Shown piece after piece: positions 35,402 through 38,890 of a stretch of DNA of 64,000 nucleotides. Numbering within the stretch: the first letter of the stretch is position 1; each line of letters begins with the position of its first letter. The notes under the pieces were generated by a model. The model searched no databases. It had not been told where the DNA came from and was given only the letters and a program-made list of their open reading frames with translations. This DNA is from Salpingoeca rosetta. Its lineage: Eukaryota; Protista; Choanoflagellata. The translations under genes were made by a program, and so were the position numbers. The DNA lies in contig JAWQFM010000016.1 in the NCBI GenBank assembly GCA_033442325.1, positions 1,345,679-1,409,678 of the forward strand. The letters are read 5' to 3'.

Positions 35402-36900
35402 ATGAGCCGGAATGACGACGACGAGGCCCGCACTGGAGGGCGTGCTGCTCTCGGTGATGGTGATGGCGGTGGTCCTAGCCCTTGGGTGGTGGCACTGCAC
35501 GTGCAGGTGGCAGCAGCGGGTGCAGGGGACAGTGCTGTGAGCTGGGGTGCAGACGCGTTGTTTGCTGCGGTGTTTGCGGCCTGCGCCCCTCGTGGGGGCG
35601 TCAAGGTGACGACTTGCGCCACGTCGCAGTGTCCACTGGCCATGCAGCTGCTCAGACAGCTGGGCATGGAGCTGAACCTCTCTGCACAGCAGTGCCGCGA
35701 TGCCCTCCACCTGCACAACTTTGCGTTGGAGAGCGATGCACGCGGCCCTGACGCTGCCACAGGCGATCAGCCAGCACAGAAGCGCAGCAAAACCGGTGAT
35801 CAGGAGCAGCACAGTGGCACCACCAACAACAACAACAACTGCAGTAGCGACAACAGCAACAGCAGTAGCAGTGGCGGGATGCAAGGCCTCAGTGCACAAG
35901 GAAACACGCCGCGCCATCGGTTCTTCGCGCTGGCCACGCCAGATCAGCTCGCATCTACAGTGCGCTCGCTTGACAAGGAGGCAGCTGAAGGTGGGGCTGT
36001 CCAACGCGCGCTTCTCGGCATCCCATCACCCGCAACACCAGCAACATCCGCGCAGGAACAGCAGCACGTGCACTTGTTCGAGTGGAGCAGCAAAGGGGCG
36101 ACGGACCCCAAGGGCACCCATACAGCCCTGCACACAGAGACAGCGCCATCGGCAGCAGTGCCAGCCGGCATCGACGTTCCGCCGGGCCTGGCGTTTGTTG
36201 GCTCACTGCCACTTGGCCATGCCCCCAGCACAGGGGTTGATGCACGTGTTGCCGTCTCTAACCTAAGGCACGTGCTGACGGCTCGCAACACAAAGGCGGC
36301 CACCGCTTGGAACACCATTGCGCGCGCGTTGGAGGCACTGGCGTGCGGCGCCCCGATTCGGCTGCACCTGGCGGCACCAACAGCTGCCGTGCTGGGCCAC
36401 GTGGAGACACAACTTGACAAGCTCGTTGCCTACACGCGCCGCTTCTCTGTCACTGGCAAGACGACCGCGTCCACCGGCGGCAAGAAGCAAGACATCCTGG
36501 CGGTGATCAGCCAGCAGCGCCTCAGGGATGTTGCCACGAGCAAAGAAGAGGTGTCCTTGGAAGAGATGAAACGCCGCGCAGCGTCGCAGCCGCCTCCCAT
36601 CGACTTTGCTGCCCGCTTGCGCGCGTGTCAGCCCATGGCGGTGATGGCGGAGGTGAAGCGGGCATCCCCAAGTCGCGGGGACATTGCGCCAGATATGAAG
36701 GCCGACGAGCAAGCGCGCCGGTATGCACGTGGTGGGGCTGCTGCCATATCCGTGCTGACGGAGCCCACGTGGTTCAAAGGCACGCTGGACGATCTGCGCG
36801 CTGCACGTAATGTGTTTCATGACGACGGCGACAGACCCGCTTTCCTTCGCAAGGACTTTCTCCTCGACGAATACCAGGTGTGTGTGGGGGGGGAGTTGGG

Positions 36901-36983
<83 letters not shown>

Positions 36984-38212
36984 GACACCTTGGTTGATTG
37001 TGTGTGAGCGACTTGGTTGATTGCCCTGTTCTGTTCTTCGTGCTCTCCCGGAACGCAATGTAACACCCTTGTCACCCACAACACTAACCCCCGTGCATGT
37101 TGAAGGTGTACGAGGCACGCGCATACGGGGCAGACACGTGCCTCCTGATTGTGGCAATCCTGTCAGACGCACAGCTGTCATCACTCATGGCCACGTGCCG
37201 CAGTCTTGGCATGGAGCCCCTGGTTGAGGTGGCCACCCCAGGCGAGATGGCCCGCGCTGTCGCTGCAGGCGCTGCTGTCATTGGCATCAACAACCGCAAC
37301 CTGAAAGATTTTTCCGTCGACACCAACACCACCGCCACCGTGATTTCGAGCGTGCAGGGTGGCCTGCGTGCATCCACGATTGTGTGTGCCCTCAGTGGCA
37401 TTAACACGCGCCTGGATGTCCAGCGGTACCGGGCAGCAGGATGCAAGGCGGTGCGTCGGCTTCTGTGTGCGTGTGCGTGTGTATGTGTGTGTAATGGTGT
37501 GTGTGACGGTGTTTGTATGTGTGCGTGTTTATATGTGTGCATGTATGTGTTTTTGCGTGTGTGCGTGTGCGTGTGTTTGTGTGGATGTGCGTGTGTTTGT
37601 GTTTATGTGCTTCCTTTGTACGTGTTTGCGTGGTTGGTTGCTTGACTTTTTCGTGTCGAGCACTTGCTACAACATGTCTTCATCATCACCACGTCACACT
37701 ACGGCTGCTGTGTTTTTTCCCTCCTTCCTGCCACCATTGCCCTCAACAGGTGCTGGTCGGTGAATCGCTCATGCGCGCGCCCGATCCTGCCGTGAAGATT
37801 GCGCAATTGCGCGGGTTGGAGCCTGCACTTGCACCCCCACCCACACCTGCTTCCACGACGGCTGTGCCCTCGACCACGCCCCTTGGTGTCCTCGTGAAGA
37901 TCTGCGGCGTCAAGACGCCTGCAATGGCGATGCACGCGATCACGTGCGGTGCGGACATGGTTGGCCTCGTGTTTGCAGAGGGGTCCACACGGAAGGTGAC
38001 GGTGGAGCAAGCGAGCGCTATTGCTGCTGCCGTTCGCAAGTTGGCGGATCTTCCACCAGCACTCACACCCGGCATCCGCAGCCGTGTCCGCGCTGCTGAC
38101 GAAGGTGTGCATTTGTGTTTGTGTGTCTGTGTGTGTGTTTGTGTTGGTGTGTTAGTGTTTGTGTTTGTATTCATGTTGTCGCTGCTACACTTGCTTTTTG
38201 CAAATACTCAGT

Positions 38213-38292
<80 letters not shown>

Positions 38293-38890
38293 AAGTTTCC
38301 ATCATAGCCCTGCTTCCTAATTCTCCTTTCACATGCGCTTTACAGACGTGTTTGCCAACTATGCGCGTGCGGCCTCGCGATTGCGTATGCTGGCGGCGTA
38401 CCGGCCGCTTGTTGTTGGTGTATTCGCCAACCAAGATGCAGCCGCTGTTGCCGACATTGCACGCGCTGTACCACTTGACGTCATCCAGCTGTCTGGCACC
38501 GAAGGGATTGACGCTGCGCGGGCGTTTGATTCCACCTCCATTGTCATCAAGGCCACGCACATCGCCCCAACCACCACTGCTGCTGACGTGGCACAGCATG
38601 TACGCGCGGTTGAGCCTGGCGTGCAGCCTGACGCAATCCTCCTCGACACCAAGAGCAAAGGCGCCCTTGGCGGCACGGGCATTGCGTTTGACCACGCGCT
38701 CGCCGCGTCGTTGGTGCGGGAGCACGGGCTGCCGCTGATGCTGGCTGGCGGGCTGACTGTGGACAACATTGGGGAGAAGGTGGCGGCGGTGCGCCCGTTT
38801 GCAGTGGATGTTTCGTCCGGTGTTGAAACGGATGGACGCAAGGACAGGGACAAGATTGAGACGTTTATTCGCGCTGCTAAACTGGCCTAG
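35402..38890 (+). CDS. trpCF: Indole-3-glycerol-phosphate synthase / phosphoribosylanthranilate isomerase fusion with a ~350-aa N-terminal TrpD-like domain; exons 35402-36877, 37106-37450, 37750-38104, 38346-38890
   Basis: IGPS motifs AEVKRASPSRG, ISVLTEPTWFKG, LRKDF, IGINNRNL, VLVGESLMRA; PRAI motifs VKICGV, GLVF, LLDT..GGTG, LAGGL, VDVSSGVET. Upstream in-frame ATGs exist, so the start is uncertain. Confidence 0.93.

What the first reader, a model, noticed from the sequence alone, without database searches (positions are those of the whole stretch)
35402..36480. Degenerate anthranilate phosphoribosyltransferase (pseudo-TrpD) fused to TrpC-TrpF
Seen: the N-terminal ~350 aa lack GATase (TrpG) motifs but follow the TrpD C-domain in order. 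AAVFAACA..GVKVTT resembles AFVAAA.GV.VAKHGN; LLRQLGMELNLSAQQCRDALHLHNF resembles VLEALGV.L.LSPEQ..RCL...GIGF; NLRHVL...ALEALACG...GHVETQLDKLVAYTR resembles the TrpD terminal helices. The PRPP-binding GTGGD and KHGN motifs are eroded and the N-terminal helical domain appears absent. Known: fungi have TrpG-C-F and enteric bacteria TrpC-F; TrpD makes the labile PRA that TrpF uses. Inference: a relic of a TrpD-C-F fusion kept as a catalytically dead scaffold or regulator, with an active TrpD encoded elsewhere. The alignment is by eye.
Basis: partly seen in the sequence, partly recalled or inferred. Interest (0 to 1): 0.8.

Follow-up and report, generated by a model that had tools for sequence, protein, structure and literature searches.

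The report
Dead TrpD relic on TrpC-TrpF enzyme
In the choanoflagellate Salpingoeca rosetta, the first ~360 residues of a tryptophan-pathway enzyme (TrpC-TrpF) are the eroded, catalytically dead remains of a third enzyme, TrpD, which is still intact in the same fusion protein of a related choanoflagellate; this shows a biosynthetic domain decaying in close relatives of animals.

Summary
Window 35402-36480 (+) encodes residues 1-360 of a four-exon Salpingoeca rosetta gene (906 aa). Its C-terminal two thirds are intact IGPS (TrpC) and PRAI (TrpF).

- **No standard match.** The N-terminal part has no Pfam, NCBIfam or PDB sequence hit.
- **Intact relatives.** The closest relative, Choanoeca perplexa, carries an intact TrpD-TrpC-TrpF fusion. 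So do Lapot gusevi and, on a partial sequence showing TrpD-TrpC only, Diphylleia rotans.
- **Profile match.** A profile of the S. rosetta N-domain plus its one orthologue (metagenome contig L001) matches a TrpD profile colinearly. P is 5e-5 and the score 41.3, against 15.6±2.9 for 200 shuffles. TrpG and TrpC-F control profiles do not match.
- **Last helix and linker.** These align with C. perplexa at E 3e-17.
- **Catalytic motifs.** GTGGD, KHGN, the anthranilate/PRPP segment and the DE metal site are gone, as is the N-terminal helical bundle. Low-complexity inserts replace the core.
- **Rate.** The domain evolves about five times faster than IGPS but stays an open frame in both species.

So this is a TrpD-derived pseudo-domain, not a glutamine amidotransferase as the NCBI name says. 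A scaffold or regulator role, and a separate active TrpD, remain untested. It is a new variant of a known kind, of moderate interest.

The parts
35402..35515 (+). Residues 1-38: D/G-rich leader plus a short strand (WVVALHV). It sits where the ~70-residue TrpD N-terminal helical bundle (PF02885) should be, and that bundle is absent.
   Evidence: Alignment with intact D-C-F fusions. No PF02885 hit. tblastn finds no TrpD-like exon upstream in the window.
35516..35740 (+). Residues 39-113: the best-preserved TrpD core. It runs from AGAGD (in place of GTGGD) through KVTT (in place of KHGN) and LLRQLGMELNLSAQQ (for LEALGxxLxLxxxQ) to NFALE (for GFLFA).
   Evidence: hhalign P=5.3e-5 and score 41.3 against 200 shuffles with a maximum of 26.5. 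The custom TrpD HMM hits residues 55-104. BLASTP to the L001 orthologue over 78-141 gives E 4e-4.
35741..36205 (+). Residues 114-268: eroded middle with N/S-rich low-complexity inserts. It replaces the TrpD anthranilate/PRPP segment (HPAM..R.E.G.RT.FN.LGPLTNP) and the DGLDE metal site.
   Evidence: Alignments. Identity to the orthologue is 7-20% with 30-67% gaps. AF2 pLDDT is below 50 over 113-180.
36206..36394 (+). Residues 269-331: helices colinear with the C-terminal helices of the TrpD alpha/beta domain (NLRHVLTAR, ALEALACG).
   Evidence: They lie inside the long BLASTP segment with orthologue P0121. They are colinear in the hhalign mact 0.2 alignment. AF2 pLDDT is 76-88 when TrpD sequences are in the alignment.
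36395..36490 (+). Residues 332-363: last TrpD helix (GHVETQLDKLVAYTRRFS) and the D-C linker. This is the only strongly conserved part of the N-terminal third.
   Evidence: BLASTP to C. perplexa gives E 3e-17 from residue 332. Identity to L001 is 57% with dN 0.42.
36491..36877 (+). Residues 364-492: first half of IGPS (TrpC), holding AEVKRASPS (E417, K419) and LRKDF (K484). Exon 1 ends at CAG|GT.
   Evidence: Pfam PF00218 E 9e-34 on exon 1. Splice sites read. The gene model equals P0001.
37106..37450 (+). Exon 2: second half of IGPS (LVEVA E533, GINNRNL, ALSGI).
   Evidence: Pfam PF00218 E 2e-37. PDB IGPS 3qja E 3e-48.
37750..38104 (+). Exon 3: end of IGPS (LVGESLMR), the C-F linker, and the start of PRAI (KICGV, Cys659).
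   Evidence: Pfam PF00697 E 1e-4 on this exon alone, just under the curated cut-off on its own. The spliced model equals P0001.
38346..38890 (+). Exon 4: rest of PRAI (LLDTKS Asp826, GGTG, AGGL, DVSSGVE) and the stop codon.
   Evidence: Pfam PF00697 E 2e-31. PDB PRAI 1lbm E 3e-25.

Best explanation
The gene encodes a bifunctional IGPS-PRAI (TrpC-TrpF) enzyme of Salpingoeca rosetta. Its N-terminal ~360 residues are the decayed remnant of the anthranilate phosphoribosyltransferase (TrpD) domain of an ancestral TrpD-TrpC-TrpF fusion, which is still intact in Choanoeca perplexa.

The remnant has lost the N-terminal helical bundle and every PRPP-, anthranilate- and Mg-binding motif, and it has gained low-complexity inserts. 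It therefore cannot catalyse the TrpD reaction.

I take it to be mostly vestigial. It stays an open reading frame because translation of the still-needed TrpC-TrpF part starts upstream of it. Only two parts remain under real constraint: a short beta-alpha core (residues 39-113), and the C-terminal helices with the linker (269-363), the latter probably as a structural cap or tether for the IGPS barrel.

Shown here: the homology, the motif loss, the shared state in a second species, and the unequal rates. Inferred: the vestigial status, the structural role of the last helices, and that PRA comes from a separate TrpD.
For: 1. **Nearest relatives are intact D-C-F fusions.** C. perplexa P0002 has PF02885+PF00591+PF00218+PF00697 and is 54% identical over C-F. 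L. gusevi and D. rotans are similar, and so is the genomic contig L082.
2. **Tree.** The C-F tree puts S. rosetta+L001 (SH-aLRT 99) with C. perplexa (90), outside the fungal G-C-F clade (95).
3. **Profile match.** Profile-profile comparison to TrpD gives P 5.3e-5 and score 41.3, colinear. No shuffle out of 200 reached it. Controls: TrpG P 0.73, TrpC-F P 0.14.
4. **Independent HMM hits.** The custom TrpD HMM hits the same place in S. rosetta and in the orthologue independently.
5. **Last helix and linker.** BLASTP E 3e-17 to C. perplexa.
6. **Motif loss.** AGAGD for GTGGD, KVTT for KHGN, no R.E.G.RT.FN.LGPLTNP and no DGLDE. The orthologue has poly-Ser at the GTGGD place.
7. **Shared state.** Orthologue L001/P0121 has the same degenerate domain. 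It was the only hit in an exhaustive phmmer of 1.8 billion representatives.
8. **Rates, S. rosetta against L001.** N-domain 29% identity and dN 0.91; IGPS 76% and 0.18; PRAI 59% and 0.36; C-F linker 26% and 1.30.
9. **Open frame.** p~1e-4 under shuffling, and codon-position GC resembles the C-F part.
10. **Transcription.** Probable transcriptome assemblies hold 100% of the N-domain words but only 76-85% of the span that includes the introns.
11. **TrpC and TrpF motifs are intact**.
Against: - No curated family model detects TrpD here, even at E<=10.
- hhalign probability is only 67%. The significant columns are about 71, plus the last helix.
- Pairwise BLASTP upstream of residue 332 is not significant.
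- The unbiased AF2 model is unusable (pLDDT 39.5). The TrpD-like model (pLDDT 55.6, Foldseek TrpD E 4e-7) was built with TrpD sequences in the alignment, so it is not independent.
- dS is saturated, so dN/dS cannot separate weak constraint from neutrality.
- The conserved islands could reflect a function I cannot see.
- No separate TrpD was found. I could only search this window, not the genome.
Confidence: 0.6

Rival explanations
1. Functional pseudoenzyme. The TrpD-derived domain is dead as a transferase but is kept by selection. It might act as a scaffold that stabilises or oligomerises TrpC-TrpF, as a docking site for a separate active TrpD so that labile PRA is handed on, or as a ligand-sensing regulatory domain.
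For: - Conserved islands between two species that are otherwise saturated at silent sites: residues 61-120 at 33-37% identity and 271-300 at 40%.
- The LGME.NLS..Q helix is kept in both species and matches the TrpD consensus.
- The open frame is kept in both species.
- N-domain dN (0.91) is lower than that of the C-F linker (1.30).
- TrpC and TrpF remain constrained, so PRA must come from somewhere.
Against: - That bundle is deleted here, so canonical pairing with an active TrpD looks unlikely.
- All ligand-binding motifs are gone, and the GTGGD place is poly-Ser in the orthologue.
- Domain length differs by about 80 residues between the two species, with large low-complexity inserts.
- An open frame is required anyway for translation of the downstream domains.
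Confidence: 0.25
2. Chance resemblance. The N-terminal third is a lineage-specific, largely disordered extension unrelated to TrpD. Only the last helix and linker are shared with the C. perplexa protein.
For: There are no Pfam, NCBIfam or PDB sequence hits. BLASTP upstream of residue 332 is not significant. The AF2 model made without TrpD sequences has low confidence. The ESM-Atlas feature search gave only sub-threshold, unrelated hits.
Against: The profile-profile score is about 9 sd above column shuffles and sits at the colinear position, while control profiles fail. Two orthologues hit the same TrpD HMM positions independently. The extension occupies the place of TrpD in the closest relatives' fusion, and it is continuous with a significantly conserved last TrpD helix.
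Confidence: 0.07
3. The region is not part of the mature enzyme. Translation starts at an internal Met near the IGPS domain, or the region acts as a 5' leader or targeting extension that is removed. The open frame would then be incidental.
For: I obtained no protein-level or read-level evidence. GC-rich sequence gives long ORFs in other frames as well.
Against: The frame is open over 331 codons with p~1e-4, against 6 and 12 stops in the other two frames. The same holds in the orthologue. Codon-position GC resembles the C-F part. Indels between the species keep the frame. The public annotation starts at the same Met.
Confidence: 0.04
4. Highly divergent but still active TrpD, or a degenerate TrpG as the NCBI product name ('trifunctional protein with glutamine amidotransferase') implies.
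For: For TrpG, only the database name. For an active TrpD, only that TrpC and TrpF need PRA.
Against: The TrpG profile comparison gives P 0.73, and there is no PF00117 hit. All TrpD positions that are at least 80% conserved in 80 TrpDs and tied to catalysis are replaced or deleted. The C-F part lies outside the fungal G-C-F clade.
Confidence: 0.03

Closest known systems
Intact TrpD-TrpC-TrpF fusion proteins of other eukaryotes: Choanoeca perplexa EP00045_P004817 (P0002), Lapot gusevi (P0010), Diphylleia rotans (P0090, partial, D-C only); also genomic contig L082
   Same: Same domain order and length class (884-920 aa against 906). The C-F part is 54% identical to C. perplexa. The last TrpD helix and the D-C linker (TRRFS..STGG..DIL.VIS) are shared.
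   Different: Those proteins have full PF02885+PF00591 (E 1e-81 to 1e-88) with GTGGD, KHGN and GLDE. S. rosetta has none of these, lacks the helical bundle and carries low-complexity inserts. I found no paper describing this D-C-F fusion in the library I could search.
Fungal trifunctional TrpG-TrpC-TrpF (for example Malassezia, Orbilia and Ascobolus proteins P0013, P0041, P0042). This is the family the NCBI name points to.
   Same: An N-terminal extra domain followed by IGPS and PRAI. The C-F part is 40-45% identical.
   Different: In fungi the N-domain is a class-I glutamine amidotransferase (PF00117). The S. rosetta N-domain does not match a TrpG profile (P 0.73), and its C-F part lies outside the fungal clade.
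Bifunctional TrpC-TrpF of enteric bacteria (E. coli, PDB 1pii), and the bacterial trpD-trpC-trpF gene order (metagenome loci L045, L023, L036, L024)
   Same: IGPS followed by PRAI in one chain. The bacterial operon order D, C, F mirrors the eukaryotic fusion order. Those loci show 54-62% identity to S. rosetta TrpC in their best segments.
   Different: The bacterial proteins have no N-terminal TrpD-derived domain in the same chain. In those loci trpD, trpC and trpF are separate, overlapping ORFs.
TrpF-TrpC pseudoenzyme fusion of Leucomyxa plasmidifera (PMC11528492)
   Same: A eukaryotic tryptophan-pathway fusion protein in which catalytic residues have been lost while the protein is retained. 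The paper interprets it as a pseudoenzyme in an organism that lacks the early pathway.
   Different: There the TrpF and TrpC domains themselves are dead (Cys to Ser, Lys to Ala). Here TrpC and TrpF keep their catalytic motifs, and the dead part is a much more deeply eroded TrpD domain.

Membership tests
Anthranilate phosphoribosyltransferase TrpD (Pfam PF00591 Glycos_transf_3 + PF02885 Glycos_trans_3N) | Match to the curated family models at or above threshold | tested here: not met
   No PF00591, PF02885 or NCBIfam TrpD hit, even at E<=10. phmmer against the PDB gave nothing.
Anthranilate phosphoribosyltransferase TrpD | Homology of the alpha/beta domain (common descent), tested by profile-profile comparison and by context | tested here: met
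   hhalign P 5.3e-5 and score 41.3, with no shuffle out of 200 reaching it; controls negative. Last helix at BLASTP E 3e-17 to C. perplexa. The closest relatives are D-C-F fusions.
Anthranilate phosphoribosyltransferase TrpD | N-terminal helical bundle domain | tested here: not met
   Only 38 residues precede the GTGGD-equivalent position, against about 97 in C. perplexa. There is no upstream exon with TrpD similarity in the window.
Anthranilate phosphoribosyltransferase TrpD | PRPP-binding glycine loop GTGGD and the KHGN(R)..SS..GSAD motif | tested here: not met
   AGAGD (39-43) and KVTT (68-71) in S. rosetta; poly-Ser at the GTGGD place in the orthologue.
Anthranilate phosphoribosyltransferase TrpD | Anthranilate/PRPP segment (H.AM.H....R.E.G.RT.FN.LGPLTNP) and the Mg-binding DG.DE | tested here: not met
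   Replaced by QKRSKTGDQ plus an N/S-rich insert, and by a Pro/Ala/Thr/Ser-rich stretch (IPSPATPATS).
Anthranilate phosphoribosyltransferase TrpD | Catalysis of anthranilate + PRPP to PRA | not testable with these tools
   Needs an enzyme assay or trpD complementation.
Class-I glutamine amidotransferase TrpG (PF00117), as the NCBI product name implies | Match to a GATase profile | tested here: not met
   No PF00117 hit. hhalign to a fungal TrpG profile gave score 11.3 and P 0.73. The catalytic triad was not examined separately.
[quoted passage not shown] | Family model match and catalytic Glu/Lys/Lys/Glu/Asn/Ser motifs | tested here: met
   PF00218 E 2.9e-84 over 368-627. AEVKRASPS (E417, K419), LRKDF (K484), LVEVA (E533), GINNRNL and SGI are present and invariant among the D-C-F relatives. 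Activity was not assayed.
Phosphoribosylanthranilate isomerase TrpF (PF00697) | Family model match and the catalytic Cys and Asp | tested here: met
   PF00697 E 1e-35. KICGV (Cys659) and LLDTKS (Asp826), plus the phosphate-binding GGTG, AGGL and SSGVE. Assigning these as the catalytic residues rests on my memory of the T. maritima and E. coli enzymes. Activity was not assayed.
Pseudoenzyme domain (a catalytically dead homologue retained in a protein) | Homology to an enzyme, loss of catalytic residues, and retention under selection | tested here: inconclusive
   Homology and loss of catalytic residues are met. Retention is shown only as an open frame in two species with a few conserved islands. 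dS is saturated, so selection on the domain itself is unresolved.

The most novel reading that the evidence does not exclude
The eroded domain is the only TrpD that S. rosetta has. The pathway would then be broken at its second step, while TrpC and TrpF have stayed under purifying selection since before the split from the L001 species. That would mean either a non-canonical source of PRA or CdRP (for example from prey metabolism) or a new role for the TrpC-TrpF enzyme. [quoted passage not shown]
Probability: 0.2. Interest if true: 0.75.

Novelty: new variant of a known kind. Interest (0 to 1): 0.5.

Why it matters
Animals lost tryptophan synthesis, and choanoflagellates are the reference point for how that happened. 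This gene shows one pathway domain caught in advanced decay inside a multi-enzyme fusion, while its two neighbours remain intact. An intact version survives in a sister lineage and a second decayed copy in an uncultured relative.

- **Annotation.** It corrects a public annotation: the N-terminal part is not a glutamine amidotransferase.
- **Fusion architecture.** It documents a TrpD-TrpC-TrpF fusion in several eukaryotic supergroups, which I could not find described in the library I searched.
- **Test case.** It offers a tractable test of whether dead domains in fusion enzymes are scaffolds or just relics. I recall that S. rosetta is genetically tractable.

If no other TrpD exists in the genome, it also raises the question of what TrpC and TrpF are doing.

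Tried and rejected
- **Family and structure-sequence scans.** Pfam, NCBIfam and PDB sequence searches of residues 1-360 and of sub-pieces found nothing. The only hit was a chance DUF6127 match at E 0.9.
- **ESM-Atlas feature search.** The best hit was fucose pyrophosphorylase at 0.79, below the level at which shuffled proteins also score. I rejected it.
- **Word-index search with the N-domain.** It returned only the protein itself. Low-complexity words may have crowded the candidate list.
- **Pairwise BLASTP of residues 1-335 against the C. perplexa TrpD domain.** Not significant.
- **AF2 with only the two pseudo-domain sequences.** pLDDT 39.5, unusable except for the order of secondary-structure elements.
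- **AF2 with TrpD sequences in the alignment, then Foldseek.** It gives TrpD, but the result is circular, so I use it only as a compatibility check.
- **dN/dS.** pS is 0.63-0.74, saturated, so I report only the dN contrasts.
- **Read laying.** No read-level evidence was obtained.
- **Metagenome scan with pseudo-domain patterns.** No relative found.
- **Metagenome scan with the full alignment.** It returned mostly bacterial trpD/trpC/trpF loci. Locus L043, a bacterial-type contig from a human-gut metagenome, was left out of my local analyses.
- **Literature.** I found no paper on a D-C-F fusion or a pseudo-TrpD. The supplements of Richter 2018 and of Erives and Fassler 2015 hold nothing on TRP4/TrpD.
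- **Earlier notes of this scan.** Nothing on tryptophan genes.
- **Stand-alone TrpD elsewhere in the S. rosetta genome.** I could not test this.
Full report
**What is there.**
The window is eukaryotic DNA with (GT)n-rich introns. The finding lies in exon 1 of a four-exon gene on the + strand: 35402-36877, 37106-37450, 37750-38104 and 38346-38890. I read GT/AG borders and phases from the sequence. The spliced translation is identical to a public 906-aa protein of Salpingoeca rosetta, P0001. NCBI calls it 'trifunctional protein with glutamine amidotransferase'.

Pfam finds IGPS (TrpC) at residues 368-627 (E 2.9e-84) and PRAI (TrpF) from about 650 to 901 (E 1e-35). The finding's coordinates, 35402-36480, are residues 1-360. 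That stretch has no hit in Pfam, NCBIfam or PDB sequences, even at E<=10. An ESM-Atlas feature search gave only sub-threshold noise.

**Is the N-terminal third real coding sequence?**
- The frame is open over 331 codons. Only 1 in 10,000 mononucleotide shuffles is open, and the other two frames carry 6 and 12 stops.
- GC by codon position (0.69/0.57/0.66) resembles the TrpC-TrpF part (0.68/0.50/0.68).
- Assemblies whose size suggests transcriptomes (24-34 Mb) hold 100% of the sampled words of 35402-36480. They hold only 76-85% of the gene span with its introns, and the introns make up 21% of that span. This suggests, but does not prove, that the segment is in the mature mRNA.
I have no read-level evidence. 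I sent none of those letters to any later search.

**What the relatives say.**
A word-index search with the whole protein found that the closest relatives are intact TrpD-TrpC-TrpF fusions, not fungal TrpG-TrpC-TrpF proteins.
- Choanoeca perplexa: P0002 and P0003, 54% and 51% identical to S. rosetta.
- Lapot gusevi: P0010.
- Diphylleia rotans: P0090, a partial sequence.

Each has PF02885 and PF00591 (E 1e-81 to 1e-88) ahead of IGPS, and the two complete proteins continue into PRAI. A Choanoeca-like genomic contig, L082, shows the same TrpD-TrpC continuity across introns.

In a maximum-likelihood tree of the C-F part, S. rosetta groups with a metagenomic orthologue (SH-aLRT 99). That pair then groups with C. 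perplexa (90). The fungal G-C-F proteins form their own clade (95).

**Is the N-terminal third derived from TrpD?**
- **Pairwise BLASTP.** Against C. perplexa it is significant only from residue 332 onward (E 3e-17). That part covers the last TrpD helix and the D-C linker: GHVETQLDKLVAYTRRFS..STGG..DIL.VIS. Upstream it is not significant.
- **Exhaustive phmmer.** A search of residues 1-362 against 1.8 billion representatives found one relative, P0121 (E 6.6e-7). It lies on ENA metagenome contig L001. There I reconstructed an 853-aa orthologue with one intron and the same degenerate N-domain, about 80 residues shorter.
- **Profile-profile comparison.** A two-sequence profile of the N-domain, cut at residue 331 to exclude the already significant helix, matches a 114-sequence TrpD profile. 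P is 5.3e-5 and the score 41.3. Residues 42-113 align to C. perplexa 101-171, that is from the GD of GTGGD to FLFAP.
- **Extended alignment.** With a laxer alignment threshold the match runs colinearly over 39-351 against 98-359, with no gain in score.
- **Controls.** Two hundred column shuffles gave 15.6±2.9 with a maximum of 26.5. Control profiles fail: TrpG scores 11.3 (P 0.73) and TrpC-TrpF 19.1 (P 0.14).
- **Independent HMM hits.** A plain TrpD HMM hits the same positions independently in S. rosetta (residues 55-104 to HMM 97-145) and in the orthologue (30-51 to HMM 123-144).

**State of the domain.**
Against the 80% consensus of 80 TrpD sequences and the hhalign alignment:
- GTGGD is AGAGD in S. 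rosetta and poly-Ser in the orthologue.
- KHGN is KVTT.
- The segment H.AM.H....R.E.G.RT.FN.LGPLTNP is replaced by QKRSKTGDQ and an N/S-rich insert.
- DGLDE is replaced by a Pro/Ala/Thr/Ser-rich stretch (IPSPATPATS).
- Only 38 residues precede the GTGGD place, against about 97 in C. perplexa. The helical bundle is therefore gone, and no upstream exon resembles it.

The functional roles I attach to these motifs come from my knowledge of TrpD structures, not from a test here.

AF2 with only the two pseudo-domain sequences is poor (pLDDT 39.5). It predicts an alternating strand/helix order consistent with the start of the TrpD alpha/beta domain, as I recall that fold. With TrpD sequences in the alignment, pLDDT is 55.6 and the model is confident only over 79-110 and 281-350. 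Foldseek then returns TrpD structures (E 4e-7, TM about 0.47-0.5). That result is not independent of the input.

TrpC and TrpF keep their catalytic and phosphate-binding motifs.

**Rates between S. rosetta and the L001 orthologue.**

| Region | Identity | dN |
|---|---|---|
| N-domain (aligned positions; about 100 further columns are gaps) | 29% | 0.91 |
| Last helix and D-C linker | 57% | 0.42 |
| IGPS | 76% | 0.18 |
| PRAI | 59% | 0.36 |
| C-F linker | 26% | 1.30 |

Silent sites are saturated, so dN/dS is not meaningful. Within the N-domain, identity peaks at residues 61-120 (33-37%) and 271-300 (40%). It falls to 7-20% with many gaps in between.

**Reading.**
The decay of TrpD predates the split of the two species, yet TrpC and TrpF stayed constrained afterwards. 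I conclude that the N-terminal third is a TrpD-derived, catalytically dead pseudo-domain left from an ancestral D-C-F fusion.

I think it is mostly vestigial. Its frame must stay open for the downstream domains to be translated. Its last helices and linker are probably kept as a structural tether for IGPS.

A true scaffold or regulator role is possible but unsupported. The deleted helical bundle is, as I recall, the TrpD dimer interface, which argues against canonical pairing with an active TrpD.

Continued constraint on TrpC and TrpF implies a source of PRA. The likeliest source is a separate TrpD. I could not search the genome for one, and this window holds none.

**Literature.**
I found no description of this fusion or of a pseudo-TrpD.
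- Erives and Fassler (PMC4339202) noted weaker conservation of early tryptophan enzymes in choanoflagellates.
- A dead TrpF-TrpC fusion has been reported in Leucomyxa (PMC11528492).

**Verdict.**
On the interpretation, the origin of the domain and its catalytic death are supported, while its role and the existence of a second TrpD are open. It is a new variant of a known kind (a dead domain in a multi-enzyme fusion). Interest is moderate (0.5).

Noticed in passing
window 35402-38890 (protein P0001): The public product name 'trifunctional protein with glutamine amidotransferase' is a misnomer. There is no GATase domain. The extra domain derives from TrpD.
   Followed up: yes
L045:4896-6648, L023:563-3241, L036:1901-3794, L024:2-1553: GC-rich (65-73%) metagenome contigs carry trpD, trpC and trpF as separate, overlapping ORFs in that order. 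Their TrpC is 54-62% identical to the S. rosetta protein in the best segments. The eukaryotic D-C-F fusion mirrors this bacterial gene order, which hints at an operon-derived, possibly transferred, origin.
   Followed up: partly
proteins P0004 (823 aa) and P0009 (850 aa), JGI metagenomes: Shikimate dehydrogenase domains are fused to IGPS-PRAI, N-terminally (truncated) in P0004 and C-terminally in P0009. P0004 sits next to the choanoflagellate clade in the C-F tree. These could be real fusions or merged gene calls.
   Followed up: partly
window 36878-37105, 37451-37749, 38105-38345 and flanks: All three introns and the 3' flank are dominated by (GT)n/(CA)n-type microsatellites. The orthologue on L001 has only the first of the three introns, at the same position (after DEYQ).
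   Followed up: partly
   Followed up: no
They lie in the repeat-rich 3' flank after the stop codon. I worked beside them and masked them in local searches.
   Followed up: no
P0003 versus P0002 (Choanoeca perplexa): The second isoform carries a 34-residue insert inside IGPS, after LVE. It looks like a retained intron in the transcriptome assembly.
   Followed up: no
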